Notes: generated by a model not told the origin, from the sequence alone. DNA of 64,000 nt from Lama glama (GCA_028534125.1 JAPYYK010000409.1:1-64000); one strand, 5' to 3'; shown: positions 3,301 to 63,096, numbered from the stretch's first letter. Numbers and translations are program-made.

Positions 3301-3319
3301 AACAATATGCGAGGGTGGT

Positions 3320-3890: not shown

Positions 3891-3899
3891 TGGAGCAGC

Positions 3900-12167: not shown

Positions 12168-12173
12168 TTTATT
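12168..12173 (-). terminator. Polyadenylation signal AATAAA of left FLNA copy
   Basis: tttatt on + strand, about 280 nt beyond the stop codon; mirror of 63091-63096. Confidence 0.85.
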
Positions 12174-12452
12174 CCTCTTGGCTAGGGAAGAGAACTAGCG
12201 GGTGGTTGTGCACAGGACCCCCACCCCTCACCCCTCCCAGAACCAAAGAAGATAGGCAGGGCCACCAGAGGGCTCCCTCTGCTCGCCTCTCTCCTTTGCT
12301 GGAGTGGAGGCAGGTGAGTGCAGCACAGGGCAGGGTCGGCTGCAGTGACAGGGTAGCCAGGGCTCCAGGGCTGAGGTGGGGTTGCTGCTCGGGTGGCAGA
12401 GGGTGGGCGCAGGGGCACTTCTCATCCTGGGAGCTGCTGGCTGGCACAGAGC

Positions 12453-27400: not shown

Positions 27401-30400
27401 CGAGAAGCCTGACAACAGCCACCAGCTCCATCAGTGTCCCAGAGCCTTGGAAGGGTGGCCCTCGCCACCCTCTGCCCCCCAGGCACCCACATTGCAGCCT
27501 CCAACTCACCCAGGGTGCCTACATCGTCCCCGATGGCTTCTACCACAAAGTCGGCTGACTTGCCAACGACGCCTCCCTCCAGCCCAGGGCCCCAGGCCCG
27601 CACCTTCTGATTGCCACACTCAGTGCCCACCTTCACCTCGAAGGGGCTGCGAGGAGAGAGCCACATCAGGAAGGGCTGAGGGACCCCGTCTTGGACAGCA
27701 GCCTGCCCGAAACCCACAGGGGAGAAGAGCACCACCTCTGAGCGCTCTGCCCACAGCCTCACCTGCGCCCGATGTTCTGGCCTCCCCACGTGATGGTGAC
27801 GATGTACGTGCCAGGGACCACGGGATAATACTCGAAGCCATAGACGCCGTCCCCCAGGTCCTTCTGTTTCACACGCTCCTCGCCCTCTGCCAGAGACGAG
27901 GAAGGGCCTCAGGCCTGGCCGGCAGTGGCCTGGGGCCAGCACTGCCCACCCCAGCTGCAGGTCAACTTACTGGGACCCTTCACAGTGACCTTCAGCTCCC
28001 CACTGCCCGCGCCCTTCGTGTAGACCTTGAAGTCAGCAGTCTCCTTCACCCGCACGCCCTTGGGTTGGAGGCCCCGGCCGACAGCACGGCAGGCACCTGG
28101 GTTACAAGCTGTGAGCAGAGAGCCAGCTGAGCTGCTGGGAGCTGGAGCTAGGCAACCCTTCCCTTGCCTCCCACGTGGCTGGACCATCAGGCCACAGAGG
28201 GTGGGGAAGGATGCGCAAGAAAGAACCAGAACGGACTGTGACCCTAAGACCTGTGGCCAAGGCCAGGACATGTCAGGCCTCCTCCCACCTGCTCCATCTG
28301 CATCTGTCCCCCACCTCCAGCCCAGCCCTCCCCTCCCAGAGGAAGACAGATCCAAGTACCGTTGACCCTGCGGGCAGAGCAGAGAGCAGCAGGTTTCTAG
28401 ACAACTGGAGCGAGCTCTTCCGAAGATGAAAGCGTGGAGAGAGAGAGAGAGATGGAGACGGGCAAGAGGTGGAAGAGGAGGAGGGGCCCCAGAAGGGGAA
28501 TAGAGAGAGAGTACATCGCCCAGACAGTGGAAGCACAGACAACCCAGGGAGATGGGGCAGGGGCTGGATGGAGAGGGACCTGCCCCGGCTGCCTCCCTCC
28601 CAAGGGAGGCCTGGGCTGCAATGGCCCAGCATGTGACAGCCAGGACTGGCCTACCTTGGCCAACAGTGACAGTGTAGGGGCTGCGAGGGATGGGCACGCC
28701 AGCGAAGGTGACGTGCACCGTGTGGACACCCTCCATGGTGGGCTGGTAACTGCAGCGATACGTGCTGTCGCCCCGGGCCTCCAGCTGAGGCACCACAGTA
28801 CCCTTCTGTCCAGCAGGGTCCTGGATCACGACCTCCACCTCACCCGTGCCAGCGCCTACCGTAAGGTACCATCTCAGCTCCCAGAGCCTCCAGGCCCCAG
28901 TGGCCCCACCCCCAGACCTTGCAGCCTCAGTACCCTCCCCTCACCTGCCGTGAAGATCTCAAAGTAGGTGGTCTTGTTGGCGATGTTGCCGCTGGGCTCC
29001 AGGCCAGGGCCCTGGGCAGTCACTTTGCTGGCATCACCCTGGGACTTGTCCACGTACACCTCGAAGGGGCTCTTGGCGATGTGCTGGCCGGCAAAGAGCA
29101 CAGTGACCTGTTCGCAGGAGGGGCAGGACGTGAGGGCGGGGTGGGGCCCTACAGCAGCTGCCCTCGCCACCAGCTTCCCCTTGGCCTGAGGGCTCACCTT
29201 GTGAGTCCCCGTCACCTCGGGGACATACCAGACAGAGAAGGTACGGTTCTTGTCATTATTGGCGGTCACCTTGGCCTAAGGTGGAAAGGAGCCCGTGAGC
29301 TCTGGCTGAGAGTGGCCCCTGCCAGCGAAGGCACAGTGGCACCTGCCCCACATGCCGTCGGCCCTACCTCCTCCTGGTGTCCAGCCGGGTCCTCCACGTA
29401 CACCAGCACCTCTCCCTGGCCAGCGCTTCTAGTCTCCACAGTGAACTCTGCCCGCTTCTTCACCATGTTGCCTGTGGGCTCGATGCCTGCCGGGGGAGGG
29501 CGCGAAAGGCCCGCGCAGGCTGTGAGCGCCGCCCCCTCCCCAGCGCAGCCCCAGCAGGCACGCTCTGTGCACGCGAGTCAGTTCAGCTTAAACCCCAGCG
29601 CACAGAGCCTTAGGTCCCAGCTGCACTCCTGCCGTGGGACAGGCCTGGGCCCGTTTTCTGGAACGTGCCCCAGTGTTTGCCTGGGCCCTCACTCCTGTAT
29701 GACGCCCTGGGCTGGGTTTCATCTCCACCGCAGTAAGGCGGACGGGTCCTTCCTCCCTCAACCCACTCCTGCCTGACTCTCGGGGGCATTTAATAACCTT
29801 GCTGCCACGTGACTCAAGACTCATCTTTAGAGAGGACACTGACCCGCAGGGAGGAGGGCGTCGCCCAGGAGCACCCACTGCTGCCTGGCTCCCTCACCTG
29901 GCCCGTAGGCTCGGGCTTTCTTCGGGTTCAGTTTGGGCCGCAGGGGAGCCCCTGGTTTCAGCTTGGCCTTGGGGAACTGGGATAGGTAGGTCATGACGGA
30001 GTGCTCATCCACATTGGGGTCCACGATCTCCTCAGGAGTGATCACCTGCCATGGGCAGAAGACAGGGGCCATTTAGCCTCTAGTCTCAGGTTCCTGGGGC
30101 GTGCCACCACCCCCCACCGGGATCTCGGCCCCTGGATGGCCCCAAGTGGTCAAGCAGGGGTGTACCTGAGGGATGCCCAGCCAGTCATCGGCCTGCTGCA
30201 TGGCTTCCCGTGCATTGTTCACAGGCTTGCTGGCGTCCCAGGAGTCCCAGTCAGGACACAGGCCTGAGGCACGAGGAAGGTGGTGAGTCGGGGGCCCACA
30301 GAACTTCCTGGTGGGCCATCCGGTCTGCCCCAGCACGCCCACGCCCCTCACCTGGGGCACAGCTGTCCACCAGGGCGCCCAGGGCCCTGCCGCTCTGCCA

Positions 30401-33400
30401 GTCCCGGCTGAAGTTTGTGATGGGCAGCTGTGGCAGCTTGTTCTGGATCCATCCCAGAAGCCTCTGCTTGGGTGTCTGTTTCTTGGCCTCCTCATCCTCC
30501 TCTTCGTCCCACATGGGCATGGAGATGGAGTAGTGTAGGATCAGGGTCCAGATAAGGCCCAAGATCAGCTTCAGGTTCCCGTCCACGATGGCCTTGCTGT
30601 CTGTGAGGGAAAGGAGTGGCAGCGCTGGGCAGGCAGGGGCCTCCGTGGGCGTCCTGTGCACATGTGTACATGCACACACAGGGTGGCAGGCCACTCCCAG
30701 GCACTGCTGTGTGGAGCACAGCGGGCCCCAGGGAGGAGAGAGAGGCCCTCGCAGGGTGGGGTGGGGCCCTCTCTGCCCAGGGCCCCTGCAAGGGCGTGAA
30801 GCAGGTTCGAAGGGAAAACACCCATGGGCAAATGGTGATGATACAGTACAGTGAGGGGGTGATGCCAGAAGCCGAGGCTGTGGGGCCCTAGAGGAAGGAC
30901 ATGCGACAGAGCTTGGCTGCAGACAGGGCCAGGGGAGGTCTCTGGAGGAGTCCCCTTCCCCAAAGATGGTGGCTCTGGAGAGTGAGTCCGATGAGCACGC
31001 CACAGCTGCCCACACACGAGCCCACCACCCATCTCCAGGGGTCTCCAGAGAATGGGCAGGAGGAACAGCCAGGCCCCAGCAGGCCTCAATGCCAGAGCCC
31101 CTGACCTGGCGCTGAGGAAGGGGAAGGCAGGCTGGTGGGGCGGTTGGGAAATACAACTGCTGCCCCAGGGTGAGTGGGTGGACGGCATGGGGCAGGGAAA
31201 GCAGAGGTGTTGAGCAAGGACCCTTTGGGTGGAGGGTGCGAGACCCACCCCCCACCACTTCCTCAGTGCTCCCCCTCCCCCCAGAGCCCAGCTGGGAGTT
31301 GGGCAGCAGGCCTGGTGCAAGGGAGGGGCTGGGAGCCCCAAGGAACCAGTGGTTGGACTGCAGGGCCCTGACTCACTGGGGCCCAGCAGGGATAGCCTGC
31401 CAGCCAGGATGATGGGCAGGACACATTCCAGGGGCCCCTCACCCAGCCCGAGGAGGAGGAGGAGGAGGTGGGGGGAGCAAAGCCAGCGAGCCTGTGTTGG
31501 GCGCCCAGGGCTCAGCTCGGGAGCCTGGGTGGCAGAAGTCATGGGTGGGGTCCCCAAGTCCCGCTGCCTCAGCAGAGCGTGCTCGGCTGCTGCCTGTTCT
31601 CGCCACCTAACGGGCCACTGGGCTGAGAGCTGGTGGCCACCAAGCTCACCACAGGGGAAGTGGTTAGGGCGGGCACCCTGTACCCCATCACTATAGCAAC
31701 CTCTCTGTGCTCTAAGCCCCACCCAAGGCCCTTCTGGGTCTCAGCCTCCTCCTGAGATTGGGGGCTGGGGGTGGTGCTCCAAGAATGGGAGAGGGCAACT
31801 CATCTTTGAAATTCCTGCTGGCATGCTCCATCCTCTACCCCCAATAATCAGGAGAAAATACTTGTCGAGTGGGTCAACTTGGGAATGGGAAGAAGGGGAT
31901 GAGTGCCTCGGAAAGGTCCATCAATGCGGCAGCCTCTGAATCCAGCAGGCAGCACTTTGAGGACCAGCGCCATGCTACTCAAAGCATGTTCCTGGACTGG
32001 GGTTGCTCCTGGTCGCACACCACTACCTAATGCTGTCCCCCGATGGCAAGCAAGGGAGGGTGGAGAGAGGACTTCAGGCTAGGGGTGACTGGAAGGTTCA
32101 GAGAAGACCAAGAGCACAGGACCCGCTGGGGCCTCCCACCAGGCTCTCACCCCCAGGATCCTGAGTCTTGTACAGGAGACCTCAGGAGGCCTGAGGCCCA
32201 CTGTGACCCATGAGAGGACACACAAGGCCAAGCTCATCAGCCCTGGTAGGTTGGGCTGGGCCCTCCCCCTAGTCCAAAGGAGGCTGGCCGAGGCCCTCCC
32301 TGTCCACCTCACAAAAGAGAGAGGGAAGGACGGGGCCCCGGGTTGAGAGAATGACGGGCTGGATGGCCCCGCCCCATCCCACCCCCTTTCCCCAGCCCCC
32401 GGCCAGCCTGACCCCTCCCTCCCCTAATCACTGCTGCTTTCCAACATTTTTTTGCCTTATATGGCAAAGCTCTGGGAACTAGGCCTGCTCCAGCCAGCTC
32501 ACAAGAGGAGAAGAAGGGAAGGGGGAGGACGAGACCCCCCCCAGACAACTGGGGTGTGGCCCGCCTCCCCACATCCGGTTGCCCCCCCCAAGGCTCAGAG
32601 ATGACTCAGCTTGGCTAGACTGAGGCTGGGACTGGGGGGTGGGCCTCCTCGGCCTCAACGACGTGCATTCCAAAGAAAGTGGTGGGGCCCTTGAGACCTG
32701 CCCTGAGTGGTTGGGGGAACCTGAGTCTCCGTCCCTCACCTTCCCAGGCTCAGCATGGACCATGCCAGGGCCAAAGGGACATCTGGAAGGCCTCTGAAAA
32801 CAAACACCTCTTGCCCCTTCCCTCCCTGTTGCATAGCCCCCTCCCCAAGTCACCAGTTCTGGTGTCGGTCCCTGAGCAGTTCCCATCTTAAGAAGTGCCT
32901 GGGATGCAGTAGGTCTGGTCAGTTCCAGCCTCACTAGCCCAGTGACACGGACATCGGGCCGGCAGTGAGCCCAGCACATGCTGGAGTACCTTCCAACCAA
33001 CTCCTGCATTCTAGATGCAGGAAGGCAAGTCCTACATGGAAGAGTTTGGCCAGAAATCAACAGTAACTTGGTGTCTAAGTAGGCTACAAGCCAGCTCCCT
33101 TCACTAGCCAGCGCACAGACCCACCTTGTCTTTCAATAGCTATGGTTCTCTCTGGCCCCCTAGTTCTGAGGGGGAGATCTAAATTAAGGCCCCCTATCTT
33201 TAGCGGGGGTGGGGGGCCTAGATAATGGAACCCACAAGCTCCATCCCCTGTTTAGGAACCACAGGGGTGCCTGAAGGCCAGACTGCCCTCTCCAAACTGC
33301 TTTAGGGGGTGGAGAGCCCTGGCCTCCGCCTCGTTAGAGATGGGGCATTGGGCACAGGGCCAGAGCTTGGCCAGTGCCCGCCCCACTAGGCCCTCTCCCA

Positions 33401-34057
33401 CCGCGGCCGCAGCGGCGGGGGCGCGGCCTGTGGAGGATGTGAGCTCAGCCTGGGCGTGGGCCAGCCGGGACAGGCGGGCGGGGCGCCTAGCGGTCCGCAC
33501 GCACCGCTGGCCAGCGAGCCTTTGTTCTCCAGGCCCACATGCATCTGGGCGGCCCCTGGAGCCTCTGGGTCAGCGCCGCATTTTAAGAGGGTGTCTGCCA
33601 GGGGTCAGCCCCCGGGAGATGGGAAGACGCACGGAGTCCCCCTCCCTCACCCTCCCCGCGCCACGGGGAGGCCCGCGCCCTCACCGATTGACACGAGCTT
33701 GATGCTCTCGCGGTCTAGGAACTCGAGCGCCACCGACACGTTCTCGAGCTGCATCTGGCGGAAGGNNNNNNNNNNNNNNNNNNNNNNNNNNNNNNNNNNN
33801 NNNNNNNNNNNNNNNNNNNNNNNNNNNNNNNNNNNNNNNNNNNNNNNNNNNNNNNNNNNNNNNNNNNNNNNNNNNNNNNNNNNNNNNNNNNNNNNNNNNN
33901 NNNNNNNNNNNNNNNNNNNNNNNNNNNNNNNNNNNNNNNNNNNNNNNNNNNNNNNNNNNNNNNNNNNNNNNNNNNNNNNNNNNNNNNNNNNNNCGGTACC
34001 GCTGCCCGGAGCCGCGCCCGCAGCGCTCTGGCCCGCCCGGGAGTGGGAGCTACTCAT
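12453..34057 (-). CDS. FLNA: Filamin A, left (minus-strand) copy; multi-exon, exons 2-48
   Basis: ATG at 34057 ([14 protein letters not shown]), stop (tca on +) at 12453-12455. Exon coordinates = 75264 minus those of the right copy (e.g. exon 2 CDS 33685-34057, exon 22 23645-24242, exon 48 CDS 12453-12640). CH domains and Ig-like filamin repeats with GT/AG junctions. No exon 1 in its own orientation. Confidence 0.95.
14681..14930 (-). other. A-to-I editing stem, left copy
   Basis: Mirror of 60334-60583. Confidence 0.75.
26085..26625 (+). mobile_element. L1 (L1MB-type) 3' fragment in FLNA intron 15, left copy
   Basis: cacttgtacttgaacgttcacagcggcactgttcacaacagccaaaagg...cccaaatgtccatcaacaaatga...agccataaaaagg. 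Confidence 0.8.
28360..28416 (-). other. Candidate poison (NMD) exon in FLNA intron 9, left copy
   Basis: Mirror of 46848-46904. Confidence 0.65.
32455..32671. promoter_or_regulatory. Intron 2 enhancer-like cluster: CArG, AP-1, TEAD (left copy)
   Basis: CCTTATATGG 32455-32464; mirror of 42593-42809. Confidence 0.6.
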
Positions 34058-34864
34058 TTTGAGGCGCGAGGAGCCGAGGGGCGGTGCTGCAGCCTAGGCG
34101 AGGGGACGGCCCTTTAATTAAAGTCGCAGGCACCTCAGCGAGCCCGGGACGATGCAGACAGCAGAGGTTGCGCTACGGAAAGAGCGAGCCCTTTAAATGC
34201 GGGCAGGGGGCGGGACAAGGAGGCGGAACTGCCATGAGGCGGGGCTGCGGGTGGGGCTTCGGGGCCGCACCCGCCCCGCCCCACCCCGCCCGTTGGAATG
34301 CCCCCCTGAGTCCCTCCGCCCCGGTGGTTTTGACCCGACCCCCAGGCTCCAGGAAGGGTCGTTGGGCCCCAAGTAGGCAAGATTGCGCCCAAGCCCTGCG
34401 GTCTCGCGCCTGCGCTGCAGGAAACGCTGCAACGAGGAAAGGCTGAGCTGTGTCTGGCGCTGGACCACCTGGCCTCCAGCGGGCACACCATACAAGGGAC
34501 TTTCCTTCCCCACGGCTCCTGCGGGGGATGGGGTGGCTCGCCCTCTGTGAGTGACGTAGGCTCCGCTCAGTCCCCCCGCAGCCCTCGCGGTCCCCCTTCC
34601 CCCGAGATCCAGCGCTTGGGGGTCCCTGGCCGCGCCCAAGCCGGTCGCTCGGCAGCAGCATGAAGGGGCCCGATCTTAAGGGCAAGCCCTTGGAGAGCGC
34701 GGGTCCGGGCGAGGCGCGGCTGCCAGCGCTGTGCGCGCGTGCGCCACGCCAGCGGAGCCCGTGGCGCCCGGACCCCAGGCCGCCCCCCAGACCCCTTGCC
34801 CCAGCTGGCCTGCCCGCTCTGCACTGCCCTGGGCTGTGCACCTGCGCCCGCCGGTCCCCACCGC
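34058..34864 (-). promoter_or_regulatory. CpG island / candidate alternative promoter upstream of FLNA exon 2 (left arm)
   Basis: Mirror of 40400-41206. Confidence 0.55.
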
Positions 34865-36565
34865 CTGCCTCCCTCCCAACCCGCTCCACCCAGGAGGAAA
34901 TGGGGCACTGGGCCAGGAGGCCACAGGCGATCCAGGAGCAAGCAGCCCTGAAAGGGGCAGGACGTGCCAATGGGCAGTGGCAGAGGCCGCAGGGTGATGC
35001 ATGCAGAGACAGCGAGTGTCCGTCTGACCCACCAGCAGTCCACCTGGGGCAGTAGGGGTTTCCTCTCCTGTCTGAATGGGCCCTGAACCCAGTGTGACCC
35101 AGGAGGTGGCCGGGCAGGGGTGGGGGGGTGTCTTCCAGACCCAGAGGGACCTGCGCAGTGGTTCCCTGAGGAACTGCTTGATGGGCTCTGTGCACCTGGG
35201 TCTGGGTGGGCTTCACTGTCACGTGGTGCAGAGGGGCCCCTGGGACACAGGGGCCAGGGGACTGAAGGGGGCAAACCACCAAGGCCTGCTGAGGAGTCTG
35301 GACAGTCACTAGGAGTTGGTGAGGACCTTGATCAGTGAAGAGCTGTCCCATGAAACTGCGAAGGAGGTGACAATCACATTCTAAACAAAGCTAGATGATG
35401 GAGTGTGGGGCCAACTGAAGTGCGCCTCCCAGACCTGGGAGCCTGGGGAGGGGAGGCCCCGTCCTGTCCTCGTAGATGACAGCTGGTAACAGAAGTGAGG
35501 AGGGCTCTGGTCAGATCCGGGCAGGTTGGCCCAGCTGGTGAGGGTCACTGTGGAGGTTTGTTCATGGGGTGAAGAAGATGTAACCATACAGTTAGTGGTG
35601 AGAAGATAGGGCCCTGATTTGACTACACAGAGCCTCAGAAAATTTGCCCAAAAGTTGCAGGGTTTTCGAGTAAAGGTGAGGCCTACCGTATCTCTGGAAG
35701 AGGACGAGGCGTGTGGGCCCCGAGACATGCAAGGCAGTACGAAAGTCGGGAGAGCCCTAGGCAGGCAGGGTCTTGCTGCTTATCTTTCAGAGCAGGAAGG
35801 GAGATGGTGTCAGGGCTCTGGGCTGCTCAGAGTCTGCCTCATGGAATTTTAAGTTTTGGCAAGATCCAATTCCCCAGCACCTCTCCAAGCCTTCTTCTGC
35901 AATGCTGGCCCCTGTCCCGGAGGCTGTCCTCCCCCATGCCACCCCTCCCCATACAGATCCAAGCTGTTTCCTTATGAGGTCAAAGAATTCTAAGTTTGCC
36001 TTCTCCCCTAGGAACACCCCGTCCCCCGGCACCTACCTTGCCACTCTGCCTTTTATCCCCTCCTCCTCCAGTCACCCCAGTATGAGGTCCCACCACCAGT
36101 GGCACCAGGAGCCTGACTTGTGATGGTCCCCTGTGCCCAAGCCCACCTGGAGACCAAGTCCAGGTGCACTGCAGGCAGACCCATCCCAGACCACCAGAAA
36201 GCAGGAGAGCCCTTGACTGTCAGAGCCCAGAGGCCCTTGGCACCACCCTTATCACGATCACATAGTCGAGTAATTAGGGGCCCAGAGAGGGAGGAGACTT
36301 GCGCAAGGGCCCCGAGTGCAGCGATTCATTCATGGATTGTTCCCCCAGTTGGTACCTAGTCCTGGGGTTATGATCTGGACAGTGTGGCCCAGAGAGGGTT
36401 CTGTGTCAGCAAATGGGCTATTGGGGGAAATCTGGGGCCTCAAGTGGAGTCTTCCTGGGAACAGGTGGGTAGAAAATTATAGGGAAAAATAATATCAACA
36501 AGAATACATTCCTCAACATTCAGGTCCAAGGAGACAATTGTTCATTGAGCTGTTAATGTTTTCTT

Positions 36566-36693
36566 TTTCTTTCTTCCTTTTTTTTGGGGGGGTAATTGGG
36601 TTTATTTATTTATTCTAATACAGGTACTGGGGATTGAACCCAGGACCTTGTGCATGCTAGGCATGCACTCTACCACCAAGCTATACCCTCCCC
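36566..36693 (-). mobile_element. tRNA-derived SINE, camelid Vic-1-like, with perfect 21-bp TSD
   Basis: Minus strand GGGGAGGGTATAGCTTGGTGGTAGAGTGCATGCCTAGCATGCACAAGGTCCTGGGTTCAATCCCCAGTACC plus (AAAT)n/C-run/A tail. TSD ttgagctgttaatgttttctt at 36545-36565 and 36696-36716. Confidence 0.9.
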
Positions 36694-37899
36694 TCTTGAG
36701 CTGTTAATGTTTTCTTAAAGATCAGAATCTTAATCCTTTGGTTCAATACAAAACTTAAGTTTTCTCTTCAAGGATGTTAAAAATCTTATAGGTTTTGCCT
36801 GGCAACAGAATGCTGTAAAACGTTGCTCAGATAGTAACAAAAGTCATAAGATGGTGAATATTGTGAAAATTAATGTGTAGGAGGTGGTCACAATTAATAT
36901 GTACCAGTGAGTGATTAGCTGACCAAAAGCCTCTCAAAGAACGCCTTGTGTTCCAAGCCTAGAAGACACCAGTTTACCTTGGGACTATATTGGCATGGCT
37001 AGTTGGAGATTCAGCTTGCCTTGATTCTAGTGGTTTTCAGGAACTTTCAACACAAGGAGGAAAGGTCTTTAATTTATTACGATCTTTACTAGAGAACAGC
37101 TGGTGTTTACAAACCTGCATTCCCTAGACCTGGAAGAAGTAGAGACCCAGAGATGCATGTGGGGAGCCTTGGCCAGGAGCTTTCTCCCTCCACCCTTTTT
37201 CTTTCTCTCCTTTAATGCAGTGGAATTGAATGGGAAATGTCAGAGTCCTTTTCAGGTAGCAAGGGAAAGGCTCATTTTGTGAACCACCTGTTTCAGTAAC
37301 TTGTGTCACCCTGTGTGTGTGCACACAAGTACTGGCTCAGGATGTACAGTGTAGTTCTTATTGGGGTTTGTGGGCAAAAGGTTTAAGACACTGCTTTATG
37401 TGGCCTTCCCCAAGAAAGTGATACTTGCATTGAATACGAAGCTACCAGGAAATAGGCGCATAGAAGAGGAAGAGGGAGCCTGGCAGTGCCAGGGTGTGGC
37501 TGTGCCCACCCAGTTCACAGACCCTTGGCTCTGTGGCTGCCCCACTACAACTGCCCACTCCTGGACTTAAGGACTGCACCTAACTGTGCTCCTGAGAATT
37601 CAGTCCGTCTCTGTTGCCCCCACCCAGGCTTGGCACCCAGTAGGGGCCAAATCAGTGGCAGTCAGGATGCTAGCTCATCCCGGGTTTCAGGTCCCTGGTC
37701 CATGGCAGATTTTTGGCCGTAGGCGCTCAGTGAACACCTGCAACGGCCCGTTGCCCACCTCCACCCCAGACGGCAGACTCCGACTTGCCTGGCCAGCCCA
37801 GGCTTGAGGCAAGGGAAGGGAGCCATGACTATGGGCCACCTGGAGGAGGTGGCCTTTCCTGCAACAGGGGCCCTGCAGACCCTCAGGGCTCTTGAGGAG

Positions 37900-38360
37900 A
37901 GCACCCCCCTCGCCAGTCGGTGAGCTCATAGGGCGGGGGGCGTCGCCAGGCGGCCGGGGCGCTGTAGCTCACGGCGCGCCCCCGCCCCCCCCCGCCCCCG
38001 CCCCCGGCTCNNNNNNNNNNNNNNNNNNNNNNNNNNNNNNNNNNNNNNNNNNNNNNNNNNNNNNNNNNNNNNNNNNNNNNNNNNNNNNNNNNNNNNNNNN
38101 NNNNNNNNNNNNNNNNNNNNNNNNNNNNNNNNNNNNNNNNNGACGCCAGTGGAGCCCCGAGGCGCCCGGTGCGGGCTCACAGGCAAGCCAGGCGCCACCC
38201 CGTGGTCGCCAGCCGTCCGCAGGACAGCAGGTGAGGCCTCCGCGGCCGGCTCCGAGCGGGATGGTCACGGAGCTGCTCGCAGACCGAGGGCGGGGGTGGC
38301 GAAGTCCGGCGGCGAATCCTGAGAACTCAGGCGCGGGCGCGCACCTAGGCCGGGGCCAGG
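37900..38360 (+). promoter_or_regulatory. FLNA: FLNA main CpG-island promoter and non-coding exon 1 (donor after 38230)
   Basis: Tandem GC boxes (cccgcccc) at 37979-38005, masked core 38011-38141, then CpG-rich sequence ending CAG|GTGAGG at 38230/38231, about 2.9 kb upstream of the exon 2 acceptor (ttccgtag|cgcaac, 41091/41092). Fits the known FLNA layout with a non-coding first exon. Confidence 0.75.
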
Positions 38361-39119
38361 TGCAGCTGGGGTGCCTTCCCTTGGGGCCGACTTACCTGGT
38401 TTACCTGAAAATCTGTGTGTGCCTGGGAGTGTGGGAGCCCTAAGTCATGGGGGTCCCTGACAGAGGGGGAGTCTGAGCGTTTGGCAGGACACAGGCTCTC
38501 CTGCGCGCCGGTGAGCTGGCCACTGCATGGCTATCTGGGAAGGAGGGGCCCAGAGAGCAGGACATTGTGTGGGCTGAGGGCGAGTGGCCACGTGGAAGGA
38601 CAATTCACAGCCAGTATGCTTCCTGGGAGGGCGACAGTGGGCTCCTCGCTGGCACCAGTCCTCTGGGTACCAACTGCTTTGGGCACAGGGAGTTGGCTGC
38701 CAGGCTGCTGTGCTCTGTGGGAGGTCAGGCAGGGGTGTGGCCCGCACAGGAAGCAGGGGCTCCTCCAAGAGGCCAGATTCCCAGGCTGGGTCCTGTCCCA
38801 GGTTGGCTCAGAGCTGGATGTTCACTGCCAGCCAAGATGCAAGCAGCAACATCCCCAGATTCCCATGCCACCTGGGTCCAGGAGAAGTAGGTGAAATCCG
38901 ATGGGAGAGCCACCAGTGTGTGCTCCAGGGTGCAAGTCAAGATGGGAACTCAGGACTTAAGTGCCCTCACCTGCCATCTGGACTTGCCTTAGTGGCCCAT
39001 CCTGCCATTCTTCGACTTTCTTCACCAGCTGAATCGCCCCTGTGGGAGGGCCTGGCCTGGGGTCTGAGGACTGGGGGTGGGGTGGGAGGCGGAGTGTATC
39101 TAACATCCAAGAATCTACT

Positions 39120-39129
39120 CCAAATAAGG
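39120..39129. promoter_or_regulatory. CArG box CCAAATAAGG (intron 1, spacer)
   Basis: Exact CC(A/T)6GG; FLNA is a known SRF/MRTF target. Confidence 0.6.
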
Positions 39130-39193
39130 GAAAATATGAAAGAGCTGGATTTTGGCTTCCAGGGACTGCTGGATCTGGGGGCTTTGGGATGGG

Positions 39194-39207
39194 GCGCCAT
39201 CTGGTGG
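39194..39207 (-). promoter_or_regulatory. CTCF-like motif CCACCAGATGGCGC
   Basis: Close match to the CTCF core CCASYAGRKGGCRS; binding not shown. Confidence 0.6.
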
Positions 39208-39811
39208 TGATACGACGTCCCCTAGGAACAAGAACCTTCTACACCCCCATCCTTTATCACCCCCAAATAGGGAAAACCTAGGGCTGGAAGCCAGGATGCA
39301 GATTCGGTCCCCTTTTCTGCTGCAGTTGGCTACTGGTCACTTACTCTGACTCAGTGTCCCTGCTCTCTGAAGATTAAGGAGTGAACACAGATGACCCAAT
39401 TGGATGGCACTTATAAAAGTGAAAATCAGTTCTCAGTGGAACTCTCTCCTTGGGAACTTGCTTTCCAGTGGGACAGAGGAAGCAGGACGAGTCTCATCTC
39501 CTCTTGAATGGGGCCTGGTAGGGAGAAGTCCCCCCTCTAAAGGTTTCCCTCCCACCTACACTCCAGATCCCAGACACCGTGGTGTGGAATTTTGTGCAGG
39601 TGTGTCTGAAAGTGGTCAGGAGAGGAGAGTGTACAGGTGAGCCTCAGACTGAAAAATGTCATTTGGAACCCCTACCACCACCATTGGTGAGGAAAAACCA
39701 GTGGGGTGACAGGCAGCCCCTAAGTGAGCATGCAGGAGGGCAGGGGAGACGCTGGCTGGGACTACAGCCCCACTGTGGGTGATGTAGACACTGCAGGTTG
39801 TGCGGCGTCAA

Positions 39812-39821
39812 CCATATTTGG
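39812..39821. promoter_or_regulatory. CArG box CCATATTTGG (intron 1, spacer)
   Basis: Exact CC(A/T)6GG. Confidence 0.6.
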
Positions 39822-40399
39822 GCATGACATGCCAGCTGACCCAGGGCCTCCTCTCCCACCGCTCTTTAGCAGATAATTTAGTTAATACTAGTCTGCAGCT
39901 CAATCTAAGAATCAAGCAGGAGGGGCAGAGACATGCTCCTCAGACACAGGCCACACTCCTCAGCAGGCCTTGGCAGCCGTCATGGTGGTTTACCCCTTTC
40001 AGTCCCCTGGCCCCTGTGTCCCAGGGGCCCCTCTGCACCACGTGACAGTGAAGCCCACCCAGACCCAGGTGCACAGAGCCCATCAAGCAGTTCCTCAGGG
40101 AACCACTGCGCAGGTCCCTCTGGGTCTGGAAGACACCCCCCCACCCCTGCCCGGCCACCTCCTGGGTCACACTGGGTTCAGGGCCCATTCAGACAGGAGA
40201 GGAAACCCCTACTGCCCCAGGTGGACTGCTGGTGGGTCAGACGGACACTCGCTGTCTCTGCATGCATCACCCTGCGGCCTCTGCCACTGCCCATTGGCAC
40301 GTCCTGCCCCTTTCAGGGCTGCTTGCTCCTGGATCGCCTGTGGCCTCCTGGCCCAGTGCCCCATTTCCTCCTGGGTGGAGCGGGTTGGGAGGGAGGCAG

Positions 40400-41206
40400 G
40401 CGGTGGGGACCGGCGGGCGCAGGTGCACAGCCCAGGGCAGTGCAGAGCGGGCAGGCCAGCTGGGGCAAGGGGTCTGGGGGGCGGCCTGGGGTCCGGGCGC
40501 CACGGGCTCCGCTGGCGTGGCGCACGCGCGCACAGCGCTGGCAGCCGCGCCTCGCCCGGACCCGCGCTCTCCAAGGGCTTGCCCTTAAGATCGGGCCCCT
40601 TCATGCTGCTGCCGAGCGACCGGCTTGGGCGCGGCCAGGGACCCCCAAGCGCTGGATCTCGGGGGAAGGGGGACCGCGAGGGCTGCGGGGGGACTGAGCG
40701 GAGCCTACGTCACTCACAGAGGGCGAGCCACCCCATCCCCCGCAGGAGCCGTGGGGAAGGAAAGTCCCTTGTATGGTGTGCCCGCTGGAGGCCAGGTGGT
40801 CCAGCGCCAGACACAGCTCAGCCTTTCCTCGTTGCAGCGTTTCCTGCAGCGCAGGCGCGAGACCGCAGGGCTTGGGCGCAATCTTGCCTACTTGGGGCCC
40901 AACGACCCTTCCTGGAGCCTGGGGGTCGGGTCAAAACCACCGGGGCGGAGGGACTCAGGGGGGCATTCCAACGGGCGGGGTGGGGCGGGGCGGGTGCGGC
41001 CCCGAAGCCCCACCCGCAGCCCCGCCTCATGGCAGTTCCGCCTCCTTGTCCCGCCCCCTGCCCGCATTTAAAGGGCTCGCTCTTTCCGTAGCGCAACCTC
41101 TGCTGTCTGCATCGTCCCGGGCTCGCTGAGGTGCCTGCGACTTTAATTAAAGGGCCGTCCCCTCGCCTAGGCTGCAGCACCGCCCCTCGGCTCCTCGCGC
41201 CTCAAA
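40400..41206 (+). promoter_or_regulatory. CpG island / candidate alternative promoter upstream of FLNA exon 2 (right arm)
   Basis: CpG-dense; CRE-like TACGTCA 40706-40712, MCAT CATTCC 40964-40969, GC-box/G-run cluster 40973-40994, TATA/CArG-like CATTTAAAGG 41065-41074. Confidence 0.55.
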
Positions 41207-44200
41207 ATGAGTAGCTCCCACTCCCGGGCGGGCCAGAGCGCTGCGGGCGCGGCTCCGGGCAGCGGTACCGNNNNNNNNNNNNNNNNNNNNNNNNNNNNNN
41301 NNNNNNNNNNNNNNNNNNNNNNNNNNNNNNNNNNNNNNNNNNNNNNNNNNNNNNNNNNNNNNNNNNNNNNNNNNNNNNNNNNNNNNNNNNNNNNNNNNNN
41401 NNNNNNNNNNNNNNNNNNNNNNNNNNNNNNNNNNNNNNNNNNNNNNNNNNNNNNNNNNNNNNNNNNNNNNNNNNNNNNNNNNNNNNNNNNNNNNNNNNCC
41501 TTCCGCCAGATGCAGCTCGAGAACGTGTCGGTGGCGCTCGAGTTCCTAGACCGCGAGAGCATCAAGCTCGTGTCAATCGGTGAGGGCGCGGGCCTCCCCG
41601 TGGCGCGGGGAGGGTGAGGGAGGGGGACTCCGTGCGTCTTCCCATCTCCCGGGGGCTGACCCCTGGCAGACACCCTCTTAAAATGCGGCGCTGACCCAGA
41701 GGCTCCAGGGGCCGCCCAGATGCATGTGGGCCTGGAGAACAAAGGCTCGCTGGCCAGCGGTGCGTGCGGACCGCTAGGCGCCCCGCCCGCCTGTCCCGGC
41801 TGGCCCACGCCCAGGCTGAGCTCACATCCTCCACAGGCCGCGCCCCCGCCGCTGCGGCCGCGGTGGGAGAGGGCCTAGTGGGGCGGGCACTGGCCAAGCT
41901 CTGGCCCTGTGCCCAATGCCCCATCTCTAACGAGGCGGAGGCCAGGGCTCTCCACCCCCTAAAGCAGTTTGGAGAGGGCAGTCTGGCCTTCAGGCACCCC
42001 TGTGGTTCCTAAACAGGGGATGGAGCTTGTGGGTTCCATTATCTAGGCCCCCCACCCCCGCTAAAGATAGGGGGCCTTAATTTAGATCTCCCCCTCAGAA
42101 CTAGGGGGCCAGAGAGAACCATAGCTATTGAAAGACAAGGTGGGTCTGTGCGCTGGCTAGTGAAGGGAGCTGGCTTGTAGCCTACTTAGACACCAAGTTA
42201 CTGTTGATTTCTGGCCAAACTCTTCCATGTAGGACTTGCCTTCCTGCATCTAGAATGCAGGAGTTGGTTGGAAGGTACTCCAGCATGTGCTGGGCTCACT
42301 GCCGGCCCGATGTCCGTGTCACTGGGCTAGTGAGGCTGGAACTGACCAGACCTACTGCATCCCAGGCACTTCTTAAGATGGGAACTGCTCAGGGACCGAC
42401 ACCAGAACTGGTGACTTGGGGAGGGGGCTATGCAACAGGGAGGGAAGGGGCAAGAGGTGTTTGTTTTCAGAGGCCTTCCAGATGTCCCTTTGGCCCTGGC
42501 ATGGTCCATGCTGAGCCTGGGAAGGTGAGGGACGGAGACTCAGGTTCCCCCAACCACTCAGGGCAGGTCTCAAGGGCCCCACCACTTTCTTTGGAATGCA
42601 CGTCGTTGAGGCCGAGGAGGCCCACCCCCCAGTCCCAGCCTCAGTCTAGCCAAGCTGAGTCATCTCTGAGCCTTGGGGGGGGCAACCGGATGTGGGGAGG
42701 CGGGCCACACCCCAGTTGTCTGGGGGGGGTCTCGTCCTCCCCCTTCCCTTCTTCTCCTCTTGTGAGCTGGCTGGAGCAGGCCTAGTTCCCAGAGCTTTGC
42801 CATATAAGGCAAAAAAATGTTGGAAAGCAGCAGTGATTAGGGGAGGGAGGGGTCAGGCTGGCCGGGGGCTGGGGAAAGGGGGTGGGATGGGGCGGGGCCA
42901 TCCAGCCCGTCATTCTCTCAACCCGGGGCCCCGTCCTTCCCTCTCTCTTTTGTGAGGTGGACAGGGAGGGCCTCGGCCAGCCTCCTTTGGACTAGGGGGA
43001 GGGCCCAGCCCAACCTACCAGGGCTGATGAGCTTGGCCTTGTGTGTCCTCTCATGGGTCACAGTGGGCCTCAGGCCTCCTGAGGTCTCCTGTACAAGACT
43101 CAGGATCCTGGGGGTGAGAGCCTGGTGGGAGGCCCCAGCGGGTCCTGTGCTCTTGGTCTTCTCTGAACCTTCCAGTCACCCCTAGCCTGAAGTCCTCTCT
43201 CCACCCTCCCTTGCTTGCCATCGGGGGACAGCATTAGGTAGTGGTGTGCGACCAGGAGCAACCCCAGTCCAGGAACATGCTTTGAGTAGCATGGCGCTGG
43301 TCCTCAAAGTGCTGCCTGCTGGATTCAGAGGCTGCCGCATTGATGGACCTTTCCGAGGCACTCATCCCCTTCTTCCCATTCCCAAGTTGACCCACTCGAC
43401 AAGTATTTTCTCCTGATTATTGGGGGTAGAGGATGGAGCATGCCAGCAGGAATTTCAAAGATGAGTTGCCCTCTCCCATTCTTGGAGCACCACCCCCAGC
43501 CCCCAATCTCAGGAGGAGGCTGAGACCCAGAAGGGCCTTGGGTGGGGCTTAGAGCACAGAGAGGTTGCTATAGTGATGGGGTACAGGGTGCCCGCCCTAA
43601 CCACTTCCCCTGTGGTGAGCTTGGTGGCCACCAGCTCTCAGCCCAGTGGCCCGTTAGGTGGCGAGAACAGGCAGCAGCCGAGCACGCTCTGCTGAGGCAG
43701 CGGGACTTGGGGACCCCACCCATGACTTCTGCCACCCAGGCTCCCGAGCTGAGCCCTGGGCGCCCAACACAGGCTCGCTGGCTTTGCTCCCCCCACCTCC
43801 TCCTCCTCCTCCTCGGGCTGGGTGAGGGGCCCCTGGAATGTGTCCTGCCCATCATCCTGGCTGGCAGGCTATCCCTGCTGGGCCCCAGTGAGTCAGGGCC
43901 CTGCAGTCCAACCACTGGTTCCTTGGGGCTCCCAGCCCCTCCCTTGCACCAGGCCTGCTGCCCAACTCCCAGCTGGGCTCTGGGGGGAGGGGGAGCACTG
44001 AGGAAGTGGTGGGGGGTGGGTCTCGCACCCTCCACCCAAAGGGTCCTTGCTCAACACCTCTGCTTTCCCTGCCCCATGCCGTCCACCCACTCACCCTGGG
44101 GCAGCAGTTGTATTTCCCAACCGCCCCACCAGCCTGCCTTCCCCTTCCTCAGCGCCAGGTCAGGGGCTCTGGCATTGAGGCCTGCTGGGGCCTGGCTGTT

Positions 44201-47200
44201 CCTCCTGCCCATTCTCTGGAGACCCCTGGAGATGGGTGGTGGGCTCGTGTGTGGGCAGCTGTGGCGTGCTCATCGGACTCACTCTCCAGAGCCACCATCT
44301 TTGGGGAAGGGGACTCCTCCAGAGACCTCCCCTGGCCCTGTCTGCAGCCAAGCTCTGTCGCATGTCCTTCCTCTAGGGCCCCACAGCCTCGGCTTCTGGC
44401 ATCACCCCCTCACTGTACTGTATCATCACCATTTGCCCATGGGTGTTTTCCCTTCGAACCTGCTTCACGCCCTTGCAGGGGCCCTGGGCAGAGAGGGCCC
44501 CACCCCACCCTGCGAGGGCCTCTCTCTCCTCCCTGGGGCCCGCTGTGCTCCACACAGCAGTGCCTGGGAGTGGCCTGCCACCCTGTGTGTGCATGTACAC
44601 ATGTGCACAGGACGCCCACGGAGGCCCCTGCCTGCCCAGCGCTGCCACTCCTTTCCCTCACAGACAGCAAGGCCATCGTGGACGGGAACCTGAAGCTGAT
44701 CTTGGGCCTTATCTGGACCCTGATCCTACACTACTCCATCTCCATGCCCATGTGGGACGAAGAGGAGGATGAGGAGGCCAAGAAACAGACACCCAAGCAG
44801 AGGCTTCTGGGATGGATCCAGAACAAGCTGCCACAGCTGCCCATCACAAACTTCAGCCGGGACTGGCAGAGCGGCAGGGCCCTGGGCGCCCTGGTGGACA
44901 GCTGTGCCCCAGGTGAGGGGCGTGGGCGTGCTGGGGCAGACCGGATGGCCCACCAGGAAGTTCTGTGGGCCCCCGACTCACCACCTTCCTCGTGCCTCAG
45001 GCCTGTGTCCTGACTGGGACTCCTGGGACGCCAGCAAGCCTGTGAACAATGCACGGGAAGCCATGCAGCAGGCCGATGACTGGCTGGGCATCCCTCAGGT
45101 ACACCCCTGCTTGACCACTTGGGGCCATCCAGGGGCCGAGATCCCGGTGGGGGGTGGTGGCACGCCCCAGGAACCTGAGACTAGAGGCTAAATGGCCCCT
45201 GTCTTCTGCCCATGGCAGGTGATCACTCCTGAGGAGATCGTGGACCCCAATGTGGATGAGCACTCCGTCATGACCTACCTATCCCAGTTCCCCAAGGCCA
45301 AGCTGAAACCAGGGGCTCCCCTGCGGCCCAAACTGAACCCGAAGAAAGCCCGAGCCTACGGGCCAGGTGAGGGAGCCAGGCAGCAGTGGGTGCTCCTGGG
45401 CGACGCCCTCCTCCCTGCGGGTCAGTGTCCTCTCTAAAGATGAGTCTTGAGTCACGTGGCAGCAAGGTTATTAAATGCCCCCGAGAGTCAGGCAGGAGTG
45501 GGTTGAGGGAGGAAGGACCCGTCCGCCTTACTGCGGTGGAGATGAAACCCAGCCCAGGGCGTCATACAGGAGTGAGGGCCCAGGCAAACACTGGGGCACG
45601 TTCCAGAAAACGGGCCCAGGCCTGTCCCACGGCAGGAGTGCAGCTGGGACCTAAGGCTCTGTGCGCTGGGGTTTAAGCTGAACTGACTCGCGTGCACAGA
45701 GCGTGCCTGCTGGGGCTGCGCTGGGGAGGGGGCGGCGCTCACAGCCTGCGCGGGCCTTTCGCGCCCTCCCCCGGCAGGCATCGAGCCCACAGGCAACATG
45801 GTGAAGAAGCGGGCAGAGTTCACTGTGGAGACTAGAAGCGCTGGCCAGGGAGAGGTGCTGGTGTACGTGGAGGACCCGGCTGGACACCAGGAGGAGGTAG
45901 GGCCGACGGCATGTGGGGCAGGTGCCACTGTGCCTTCGCTGGCAGGGGCCACTCTCAGCCAGAGCTCACGGGCTCCTTTCCACCTTAGGCCAAGGTGACC
46001 GCCAATAATGACAAGAACCGTACCTTCTCTGTCTGGTATGTCCCCGAGGTGACGGGGACTCACAAGGTGAGCCCTCAGGCCAAGGGGAAGCTGGTGGCGA
46101 GGGCAGCTGCTGTAGGGCCCCACCCCGCCCTCACGTCCTGCCCCTCCTGCGAACAGGTCACTGTGCTCTTTGCCGGCCAGCACATCGCCAAGAGCCCCTT
46201 CGAGGTGTACGTGGACAAGTCCCAGGGTGATGCCAGCAAAGTGACTGCCCAGGGCCCTGGCCTGGAGCCCAGCGGCAACATCGCCAACAAGACCACCTAC
46301 TTTGAGATCTTCACGGCAGGTGAGGGGAGGGTACTGAGGCTGCAAGGTCTGGGGGTGGGGCCACTGGGGCCTGGAGGCTCTGGGAGCTGAGATGGTACCT
46401 TACGGTAGGCGCTGGCACGGGTGAGGTGGAGGTCGTGATCCAGGACCCTGCTGGACAGAAGGGTACTGTGGTGCCTCAGCTGGAGGCCCGGGGCGACAGC
46501 ACGTATCGCTGCAGTTACCAGCCCACCATGGAGGGTGTCCACACGGTGCACGTCACCTTCGCTGGCGTGCCCATCCCTCGCAGCCCCTACACTGTCACTG
46601 TTGGCCAAGGTAGGCCAGTCCTGGCTGTCACATGCTGGGCCATTGCAGCCCAGGCCTCCCTTGGGAGGGAGGCAGCCGGGGCAGGTCCCTCTCCATCCAG
46701 CCCCTGCCCCATCTCCCTGGGTTGTCTGTGCTTCCACTGTCTGGGCGATGTACTCTCTCTCTATTCCCCTTCTGGGGCCCCTCCTCCTCTTCCACCTCTT
46801 GCCCGTCTCCATCTCTCTCTCTCTCTCCACGCTTTCATCTTCGGAAGAGCTCGCTCCAGTTGTCTAGAAACCTGCTGCTCTCTGCTCTGCCCGCAGGGTC
46901 AACGGTACTTGGATCTGTCTTCCTCTGGGAGGGGAGGGCTGGGCTGGAGGTGGGGGACAGATGCAGATGGAGCAGGTGGGAGGAGGCCTGACATGTCCTG
47001 GCCTTGGCCACAGGTCTTAGGGTCACAGTCCGTTCTGGTTCTTTCTTGCGCATCCTTCCCCACCCTCTGTGGCCTGATGGTCCAGCCACGTGGGAGGCAA
47101 GGGAAGGGTTGCCTAGCTCCAGCTCCCAGCAGCTCAGCTGGCTCTCTGCTCACAGCTTGTAACCCAGGTGCCTGCCGTGCTGTCGGCCGGGGCCTCCAAC

Positions 47201-62200: not shown

Positions 62201-62811
62201 TGTTGGCCAAGGGTCTGGGGCTAAGCAAGGCCTACATGGGCCAGAAGAGCAGCTTCACGGTGGACTGCAGCAAAGCAGGTGGGCACCCAGGACCCAGCCC
62301 TTGGCCAGTGCCTGGGAACATGGGAAGGGGTGAAGTGGGGGTGGGACAAATGCCTTTTGGGGCATGGCTGTCACTTCTAGAGCAACTTCCCACCTGGGCT
62401 TCCCTGCCATCTCCTCTACCCTTCAGGAAAGTGCCTTCGAGGAGCTGGAGTTTCCCCTATTGGTTTGGGGTGGGGGTGCTGGCAGCTCGGCAGAAAGGGC
62501 TGTCACCTGAAAATGGGTGAGGTGGGAAGGGGAGACTCCAGAACAGGAGGAGAGATCAGTGCAGTCACAGCTGAAGGGAGGGGACTTGGAGCCTGGAACT
62601 GAGGCCCCTTCCCCTACCCCTAGGCAACAACATGCTGCTGGTGGGGGTACATGGGCCACGGACGCCCTGTGAGGAGATCCTGGTGAAGCATGTGGGCAGC
62701 AGGCTCTACAGTGTCTCCTACCTGCTCAAGGACAAGGGGGAGTACACGCTGGTGGTCAAATGGGGTGATGAGCACATCCCAGGCAGCCCCTACCGTGTCC
62801 TGGTGCCCTGA
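41207..62811 (+). CDS. FLNA: Filamin A, right (plus-strand) copy; multi-exon, exons 2-48
   Basis: Coding exons read from GT/AG junctions: 41207-41579, 44664-44912, 45001-45098, 45219-45366, 45778-45896, 45989-46066, 46157-46319, 46409-46609, 47156-47293, 47378-47501, 47618-47754, 47856-48049, 48218-48331, 48419-48562, 49260-49383, 49467-49627, 49714-49804, 49885-50054, 50326-50443, 50543-50805, 51022-51619, 51704-51877, 51959-52121, 52199-52359, 52455-52625, 53030-53153, 53244-53400, 54084-54273, [small alternative exon 30 presumably under N 54307-54510], 56776-57023, 57129-57224, 57404-57506, 57587-57727, 57835-57963, 58158-58331, 58428-58589, 58690-58893, 58968-59120, 59238-59360, 59482-59748, 59901-60038, 60239-60354, [exon 44 presumably under N 60860-61055], 61426-61602, 61770-61988, 62075-62278, 62624-62811. 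Phases are consistent. FLNA-specific N-terminus, RRRAPSV phosphosite and C-terminus [16 protein letters not shown]. Confidence 0.97.
42593..42809. promoter_or_regulatory. Intron 2 enhancer-like cluster: TEAD, AP-1, CArG (right copy)
   Basis: GGAATG 42593-42598, TGAGTCA 42656-42662, CCATATAAGG 42800-42809. Confidence 0.6.
46848..46904 (+). other. Candidate poison (NMD) exon in FLNA intron 9, right copy
   Basis: AG|...|GT-bounded 57-nt segment after a long CU-rich tract; joined to exon 9 it reads E-L-A-P-V-V-stop. Confidence 0.65.
48639..49179 (-). mobile_element. L1 (L1MB-type) 3' fragment in FLNA intron 15, right copy
   Basis: Mirror of 26085-26625. Confidence 0.8.
60334..60583 (+). other. 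A-to-I editing stem: exon 43 end (Gln CAG 60352-60354) and intronic complementary sequence, right copy
   Basis: 60334-60374 (cttactgtttctagtcttcaggtgagacaccgagagaaacc) is imperfectly complementary to 60544-60583 (gtttttctcgtgtctcaggtctaaaggctttgaacagaag); position fits the known FLNA Q/R recoding site. Confidence 0.75.
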
Positions 62812-63090: not shown

Positions 63091-63096
63091 AATAAA
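63091..63096 (+). terminator. Polyadenylation signal AATAAA of right FLNA copy
   Basis: aataaa 280 nt after TGA, followed by a GT/T-rich stretch. Confidence 0.85.

What the first reader, a model, noticed from the sequence alone, without database searches (positions are those of the whole stretch)
35267..37900. Emerin (EMD) is missing from its conserved position upstream of FLNA
Known: in human and mouse EMD lies a few kb upstream of FLNA exon 1, divergently transcribed, inside the inverted repeats. Seen: only about 2.7 kb of unique DNA lies upstream of exon 1 before the second FLNA copy begins. No LEM-domain start (MDNY/MDDY..LSD.EL) or emerin transmembrane tail is visible in the ORF track or by eye. 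Inference: the duplication replaced the EMD-containing segment, so emerin was relocated, survives as a retrocopy, or was lost in this lineage. Its loss causes Emery-Dreifuss muscular dystrophy in humans.
Basis: partly seen in the sequence, partly recalled or inferred. Interest (0 to 1): 0.8.

Follow-up and report, generated by a model that had tools for sequence, protein, structure and literature searches.

The report
FLNA palindrome with no emerin gene
In this (apparently camelid) assembly, an inverted second copy of the filamin A gene sits where the emerin gene normally lies, as in human emerin-deletion alleles that cause Emery-Dreifuss dystrophy; I could not test whether the animal's DNA really has this structure.

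Summary
Two FLNA copies lie head to head. The arms are 11264-35281 (-) and 39983-64000 (+): 24,018 nt with 2 mismatches, both in the last 15 nt. The spacer is 4,701 nt. It carries FLNA non-coding exon 1 (ends 38230) and intron 1 of the right copy. Only 2,729 nt (35282-38010) of unique DNA lie upstream. The left copy starts in intron 1 and lacks exon 1.

No trace of emerin appears in the spacer, in 1-11700, or in six-frame motif scans of the whole window. Pfam LEM, PDB sequences, LEM motifs and a tail-anchor scan were all negative.

The layout matches known human EDMD alleles with complete EMD deletion plus an inverted partial FLNA duplication (PMC8719250). The inner boundary is eroded (two transitions, a 12-nt indel, then 19 identical nt). 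This fits a real junction better than a hairpin-type read artefact.

My odds: real replacement of EMD 0.40, false duplication 0.35, EMD merely displaced 0.20.

The scan's other notes all come from this same window, none from other DNA.

The parts
1..11263 (.). DNA downstream of the left FLNA copy. It may continue the left arm, but this cannot be tested because the right arm is cut by the window end. It holds a CpG-island-like stretch at about 4000-4700 and an N run at 5283-5444. No EMD.
   Evidence: ORFs and sequence. Pfam on 276 pieces gave no LEM or other real family. Only tRNA-like SINE and noise in Rfam.
11264..35281 (-). Left palindrome arm: FLNA exons 2-48 plus the 3' 1.1 kb of intron 1. 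Stop codon at 12453-12455, ATG at 34055-34057. It lacks exon 1 and the CpG-island promoter.
   Evidence: Inverted repeat. Two mismatches only. FLNA exon translations. Filamin and CH domains. Filamin-A is the best PDB match.
35267..35315 (.). Eroded inner boundary, the novel junction. It has transitions at 35267 and 35272, a 12-nt gap relative to the right side, then 19 identical nt (35276-35294 against the reverse complement of 39955-39973), after which homology fades.
   Evidence: Alignment A1, blastn of the spacer against itself, translations of both junctions.
35282..38010 (.). 2,729 nt of unique DNA upstream of FLNA exon 1. It is non-coding and holds no emerin exon.
   Evidence: Sequence. 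Pfam on all pieces. PDB searches of the longest minus-strand pieces. Motif and tail-anchor scans.
36579..36690 (-). tRNA-derived SINE flanked by a perfect 21-nt target-site duplication (36545-36565 and 36696-36716). A related copy lies at 2431-2548.
   Evidence: Rfam tRNA hit at 36619-36690. Direct repeat and the 77% match to 2431-2548.
38011..38141 (.). N run inside the G+C-rich promoter region. Not read and not filled.
   Evidence: The N runs in the arms mirror each other exactly, so they behave as sequence-determined masks rather than gaps.
38142..38230 (+). 3' part of FLNA non-coding exon 1 of the right copy. The splice donor is cagcag|gtgagg at 38230/38231.
   Evidence: Sequence. It pairs with the exon 2 acceptor at 41091/41092. 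Its resemblance to the human FLNA 5'UTR is from memory only.
38231..41091 (+). Intron 1 of the right FLNA copy (2,861 nt). The arm boundary at 39982/39983 lies inside it, 1,109 nt before exon 2.
39983..64000 (+). Right palindrome arm: the complete FLNA copy from mid-intron 1 onward (ATG at 41207-41209), cut by the window end.

Best explanation
The window records a real rearrangement of the FLNA-EMD locus, of the type known from human Emery-Dreifuss alleles. An inverted copy of FLNA (exons 2-48, with whatever lies downstream of it) took the place of EMD and the EMD-proximal part of the FLNA-EMD intergenic DNA.

Inferred mechanism: the ancestral locus had FLNA and EMD between two large inverted repeats. 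A break on the EMD side was repaired by copying inward from the other repeat through FLNA, or by exchange between oppositely oriented copies of the segment. The copy stopped in FLNA intron 1 and was joined about 2.85 kb upstream of exon 1. This left one novel junction at 35267-35315.

The result is a palindrome with arms of at least 24 kb and a 4.7 kb spacer that holds the only exon 1 and CpG-island promoter. One FLNA copy is complete, one lacks exon 1, and no EMD remains at this site.

Shown: the structure, the junction anatomy and the absence of emerin signals in the window. Inferred: the ancestral flanking repeats, the repair route, that the structure exists in the animal, and whether it is fixed or only one allele.
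For: - Structure: 24,018-nt arms with differences only in the last 15 nt. The right copy has exon 1, intron 1 and exon 2 in order, and the left copy stops in intron 1.
- Junction: two transitions and a 12-nt indel sit within about 30 nt of the end, followed by 19 identical nt. By my estimate, a 19-nt inverted match between 2.7 kb and 1.8 kb of DNA is expected about 2e-5 times by chance. So the copy originally reached at least 35294.
- All differences cluster at the edge. This fits error-prone repair at the junction, or gene conversion that does not reach the edge.
- The common hairpin-type read artefacts give no spacer. Here the spacer is 4.7 kb and asymmetric.
- The sequence runs through both junctions without a break, and the N runs mirror exactly, so they act as masks rather than gaps.
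- Precedent: human alleles with complete EMD deletion plus duplication of FLNA exons 29-48, with breakpoints in FLNA intron 28 and intron 1 and 5-bp microhomology. Earlier cases by Small 1997 and Small & Warren 1998 are cited there (PMC8719250).
- FLNA and EMD lie between inverted repeats in human and 15 other mammals (PMC8327919).
- No emerin signal was found.
Against: - No independent read or contig was seen across the left junction.
- Zero differences over 24,003 nt is also what a false duplication gives.
- A null allele of a disease gene in a reference animal is unlikely a priori. No paper reports emerin loss in any mammal.
- The flanking ancestral repeats were not shown in this species.
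- The sampled-word shares of the DNA runs (0.88-0.99) cannot tell whether the roughly 5-6 junction words are present.
Confidence: 0.4

Rival explanations
1. Assembly artefact. The left arm is a false inverted duplication of the single true FLNA gene, created from a chimeric molecule or read or by a graph error. In the real genome the DNA to the left of about 35295 continues toward an intact EMD.
For: - The arms are identical over 24,003 nt, as expected when the same reads polish both copies.
- The three differences sit next to the join, where a consensus built from few reads would keep errors.
- Only one novel junction carries the whole claim, and it has no independent support here.
- False duplications are common in draft assemblies (general knowledge).
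- Emerin is conserved across mammals, and no loss is reported.
Against: - The usual technical fold-backs (missed adapter, or the complement strand read after the template strand) give hairpins without a spacer. Here the spacer is 4.7 kb and asymmetric.
- A random ligation chimera would rarely join two points of one 30-kb locus.
- The boundary carries a 12-nt indel and two transitions next to 19 clean bases, rather than a sharp join.
- The region is gapless apart from mirrored masks.
- The same architecture arises naturally at this locus in humans.
Confidence: 0.35
2. A real inverted duplication that was inserted rather than substituted. A copy of FLNA plus downstream DNA landed between EMD and the FLNA promoter. 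EMD is intact but lies more than 35 kb to the left, beyond the outer end of the left arm and outside the window.
For: - The window ends before the outer end of either arm, so a second junction and EMD could lie outside it.
- 1-11263 shows no EMD, which only pushes the boundary outward.
- This reading keeps a conserved gene intact.
Against: - It needs two novel junctions instead of one.
- The human precedents at this locus are replacements with EMD deleted.
- If 1-11263 corresponds to the ancestral flanking repeat, no room is left for EMD. That correspondence is inference from the human layout and was not tested.
Confidence: 0.2

Closest known systems
Human EDMD alleles with complete EMD deletion and partial inverted FLNA duplication (Small et al. 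1997; Small & Warren 1998; PMC8719250)
   Same: EMD is wholly absent. An inverted copy of FLNA that includes its 3' end lies in EMD's place. One complete FLNA copy is kept. One breakpoint lies in a FLNA intron and the other in the intron 1 / FLNA-EMD linking region. The join is non-homologous or by short homology. The locus is framed by large inverted repeats.
   Different: Here the copy is nearly the whole gene (exons 2-48, against exons 29-48 in the human case). The junction shows 19 shared nt plus a 12-nt indel and two transitions, rather than a 2-5 bp overlap. It sits in a reference assembly of an animal, not in a patient. Its presence in the animal's DNA, its frequency and any phenotype are unknown.
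Human X palindrome P24 and the eutherian FLNA-EMD inverted repeats (Caceres et al. 2007, as cited in PMC8327919)
   Same: Large, near-identical inverted arms at the FLNA locus on the X chromosome, a region known for recurrent rearrangement.
   Different: In human P24, FLNA and EMD are both single-copy genes in the spacer. Here FLNA itself forms the arms, the spacer is only 4.7 kb (exon 1, promoter and 2.7 kb upstream), and EMD is absent.
Inverted duplications mediated by inverted repeats plus a microhomology junction, by replicative repair (DUP-TRP/INV-DUP type, Carvalho et al.; from memory, not read here)
   Same: One junction is hidden in pre-existing inverted repeats and one is a novel junction with short homology. 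Point changes and small indels cluster near the breakpoint.
   Different: No triplicated segment is visible in the window, and the repeat-mediated junction was not observed.
False duplications in genome assemblies (general knowledge)
   Same: Two identical copies of a gene side by side, with one copy incomplete.
   Different: The orientation is inverted, with a unique 4.7-kb asymmetric spacer and an eroded boundary. There is no gap at the junction.

Membership tests
EMD-deletion / inverted FLNA-duplication rearrangement (human EDMD type) | EMD completely absent from the FLNA-adjacent position | tested here: met
   No LEM domain, emerin-like motif, tail anchor or PDB emerin match in the spacer or in 1-11700. 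The six-frame motif and tail-anchor scans covered the whole window. This applies within the window only.
EMD-deletion / inverted FLNA-duplication rearrangement (human EDMD type) | Inverted partial copy of FLNA that includes the 3' end, beside one complete FLNA copy | tested here: met
   The left arm holds exons 2-48 without exon 1. The right copy has exon 1, intron 1 and exon 2 in order.
EMD-deletion / inverted FLNA-duplication rearrangement (human EDMD type) | Novel junction between a FLNA intron and the intron 1 / FLNA-EMD linking region, joined by short homology | tested here: met
   Intron 1 (reverse complement) is joined 2.85 kb upstream of exon 1. There are 19 shared nt, a 12-nt indel and 2 transitions.
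EMD-deletion / inverted FLNA-duplication rearrangement (human EDMD type) | Large flanking inverted repeats that supply the second, homologous junction | not testable with these tools
   The right arm is cut by the window end at 64000. No neighbouring sequence or other assembly could be fetched.
EMD-deletion / inverted FLNA-duplication rearrangement (human EDMD type) | Junction and twofold FLNA dosage present in the organism's DNA | not tested
The word shares of runs cannot resolve the few junction words.
Mammalian X palindrome P24 (FLNA and EMD in the spacer) | Long arms with more than 99% identity | tested here: met
   24,018 nt with 2 mismatches.
Mammalian X palindrome P24 (FLNA and EMD in the spacer) | FLNA and EMD both single-copy in the spacer | tested here: not met
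   FLNA forms the arms. The spacer holds only exon 1, part of intron 1 and 2.7 kb of upstream DNA.
Emerin / LEM-domain gene | LEM domain (PF03020) near the N-terminus and a C-terminal tail anchor | tested here: not met
   Sensitivity for a LEM domain split over two exons was not controlled.
Assembly false duplication | Junction unsupported by reads, and single-copy read depth over the 'duplicated' segment | not tested
Assembly false duplication | Copies identical, with a gap or contig end at the join | tested here: inconclusive
   The copies are identical. However, there is no N at the junction: the nearest N run starts 2.7 kb away at 38011 and looks like a mask.

The most novel reading that the evidence does not exclude
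The palindrome is fixed in this camelid lineage, and it deleted emerin outright. These animals would then live without the inner-nuclear-membrane protein whose loss causes Emery-Dreifuss muscular dystrophy in humans. They would also carry two gene-converting FLNA bodies that share one invertible promoter and exon 1.
Probability: 0.12. Interest if true: 0.8.

Novelty: new member of a known kind. Interest (0 to 1): 0.45.

Why it matters
If the structure is real, it is the animal counterpart of the human EMD-deletion/FLNA-duplication alleles. It would show that the repeat-framed FLNA-EMD locus produces the same rearrangement outside primates.

If it is only an allele, the reference animal or its relatives would be a natural large-animal emerin null.

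If it is fixed, a whole mammalian lineage would lack emerin (or have moved it). That bears on how dispensable emerin is and on which LEM-domain proteins compensate.

If it is an artefact, it is a false FLNA gene gain and a false EMD loss. Both should be flagged before the assembly is used for gene-loss or copy-number surveys.

Tried and rejected
2. Exact look-up of 10 ORFs in and across the junctions found none in the protein collection.
3. A word search with the junction-spanning ORF 34929-35351(-) gave no hit. Non-coding ORFs of this genome are not in that database, so this says nothing about the junction.
4. A metagenome scan for a 36-mer just inside the unique DNA (35300-35335) gave no match.
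5. The big protein search used one open FLNA piece, in the hope of reaching annotated FLNA loci and their neighbours.
6. Literature searches for emerin loss, or for emerin in camelids, gave nothing relevant. The Caceres 2007 paper is not held.
7. Findings notes for this genome mention emerin and FLNA only on this window, and have nothing for RPL10 or TKTL1.
9. I built no joined spliced FLNA model. FLNA identity rests on single exon pieces given by reference.
10. I considered that a short native inverted repeat misled the assembler, and rejected it. The homology beyond the perfect arms is only about 48 nt.
11. N runs were neither filled nor looked up.

Full report
**What is in the sequence**

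The window contains one very large inverted repeat. Its arms are 11264-35281 and 39983-64000 (24,018 nt), and the right arm is cut by the window end. A base-by-base comparison finds only two mismatches, at 35267 and 35272, which are the last 15 nt of the arm. The N runs inside the arms mirror each other exactly, so they behave as sequence-determined masks. I did not read or fill them.

The left arm carries FLNA on the minus strand. The last coding exon ends '...GSPYRVLVP' with its stop at 12453-12455, and the initiator exon '[14 protein letters not shown]...' starts at 34057. Exon pieces given by reference hit the Pfam Filamin repeat and CH domain. One open piece, 23370-24314(-), matches Filamin-A chains best in the PDB and filamins in the 1.8-billion-protein library.

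**The spacer**

The spacer is 35282-39982, 4,701 nt. It contains the following.
- A G+C-rich stretch interrupted by an N run (38011-38141).
- A short exon-like segment ending in a consensus donor, cagcag|gtgagg, at 38230/38231.
- On the same strand, 2,861 nt further on, an acceptor ccgtag| at 41091/41092, followed by a 5'UTR and the ATG at 41207.

This is the non-coding exon 1, intron 1 and exon 2 arrangement of FLNA. FLNA exon 1 is described as non-coding in PMC8719250. The resemblance of these bases to the human FLNA 5'UTR is from my memory only.

The right copy is therefore complete. The arm boundary at 39983 lies inside its intron 1, 1,109 nt before exon 2. The left copy stops in intron 1 and has no exon 1.

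That stretch holds a tRNA-derived SINE (Rfam tRNA hit) with a perfect 21-nt target-site duplication. From memory, its sequence looks like the common camelid SINE. Organism names in the run search were coded, so the taxon is an inference.

**Is emerin there?**

No test found it.
- All 136 stop-to-stop pieces of at least 22 aa from both strands of the spacer were scanned against Pfam at E up to 10. There was no LEM domain and nothing above noise.
- The same scan on 276 pieces of at least 26 aa from 1-11700 also found none.
- Patterns for the LEM core and the emerin start found nothing in six frames of the whole window.
- A scan for a hydrophobic tail just before a stop found only a poly-T/SINE artefact and FLNA intron pieces.
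- Six of the longest minus-strand pieces of 35384-37968, the strand on which a divergent EMD would lie, found no emerin chain in the PDB at E up to 10.

There are limits. The LEM domain is split across two short exons, and I had no emerin sequence by reference for a positive control or a tblastn.

**The junction**

Beyond the perfect arms the homology does not stop sharply. Relative to the right side, the left side shows:
- two transitions;
- a 12-nt gap flanked by CCA;
- 19 identical nt (35276-35294 against the reverse complement of 39955-39973);
- then a fade into unrelated sequence.

By my estimate, a 19-nt inverted match between stretches of this size is expected about 2e-5 times by chance. 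The copied segment therefore originally reached at least 35294. All three differences between the copies lie within about 30 nt of its end, and none lies in the other 24,003 nt.

Three readings fit this:
- error-prone repair synthesis when the junction formed (a recent event);
- an older palindrome whose arms are homogenised by gene conversion except at the very edge;
- consensus errors next to a chimeric join.

**Comparison with what is known**

In humans, FLNA and EMD are the two spacer genes of X palindrome P24. The pair is flanked by inverted repeats in 15 further mammals, although the repeats are not orthologous in all of them (PMC8327919).

Human Emery-Dreifuss alleles have been described with complete EMD deletion plus duplication of FLNA exons 29-48. 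Their breakpoints lie in FLNA intron 28 and intron 1, joined by a 5-bp overlap on the inversion background. Earlier cases by Small et al. 1997 and Small & Warren 1998 are of the same kind (PMC8719250).

The window shows the same architecture with a longer copy (exons 2-48). Its second breakpoint lies 2.85 kb upstream of exon 1 rather than in intron 1. It works like those alleles and meets every defining feature I could test. Two features were not testable: the flanking repeats, and the presence of the structure in the animal's DNA.

**Real or artefact?**

I could not get read-level evidence.
Afterwards I worked beside those places and their mirror, 40340-40382.
- Junction-spanning ORFs are not in the protein collections.
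- A metagenome scan was blank.
- The stretch 34650-38010 is held at 0.88-0.99 of sampled words by DNA runs of four coded organisms, and at lower shares by RNA runs (10 studies in all). Only about 5-6 of the 364 sampled words would be junction-specific, so these shares cannot decide.

For a real structure:
- The spacer is 4.7 kb and asymmetric, whereas hairpin-type read artefacts have no spacer.
- The boundary is eroded rather than sharp.
- The sequence is gapless through both junctions.
- The same event occurs naturally at this locus in humans.

For an artefact:
- The arms are perfectly identical.
- The whole claim rests on a single novel junction.
- Emerin is conserved in mammals.

My odds:
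- real replacement of EMD: 0.40;
- assembly artefact: 0.35;
- real insertion that merely displaced an intact EMD beyond the window: 0.20.

**Verdict**

'Emerin was lost or relocated in this lineage' is untested.

It is a new member of a known kind of rearrangement if real, and a false gene gain plus a false gene loss if not.

The scan's other notes on emerin and FLNA all come from this same window, none from other DNA.

Noticed in passing
window 3990-4700 and 5283-5444: About 7 kb downstream of the left FLNA copy lies a CpG-island-like stretch with promoter-type motifs (inverted CCAAT 'gattgg', 'ccggaag') and a possible first exon ending gaagggag|gtgagg near 4330. About 1 kb further on is a 162-nt N run. 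No protein family hit in any piece.
   Followed up: partly
window 36545-36716 and 2431-2548: A tRNA-derived SINE with a perfect 21-nt target-site duplication lies in the unique upstream DNA. A 77% identical copy lies in opposite orientation at 2431-2548. From memory the element looks like the common camelid SINE.
   Followed up: partly
window 34650-38010: RNA-seq runs (coded X15-X19) hold 21-41% of the sampled words of this stretch, which is FLNA intron 1 plus 'intergenic' upstream DNA. Part of it may be transcribed, for example divergently from the FLNA CpG island toward the exon-1-less copy. This could not be examined without read laying.
   Followed up: no
window 41000-41091 (mirror 34173-34264): GC boxes and a TATA-like 'gcatttaaaggg' lie directly upstream of the exon 2 acceptor in both copies. 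They could be an internal promoter for the copy that lacks exon 1.
   Followed up: no
window 38932-38987: A 58-nt imperfect local palindrome (76% self-complementary) lies in FLNA intron 1 within the spacer.
   Followed up: no
P0059, matching window 23370-24314(-): A 268-aa library protein matches the FLNA piece at 88% identity, including the translated intron read-through. So some ORFs called on mammalian genomic DNA are present in the public protein library.
   Followed up: no
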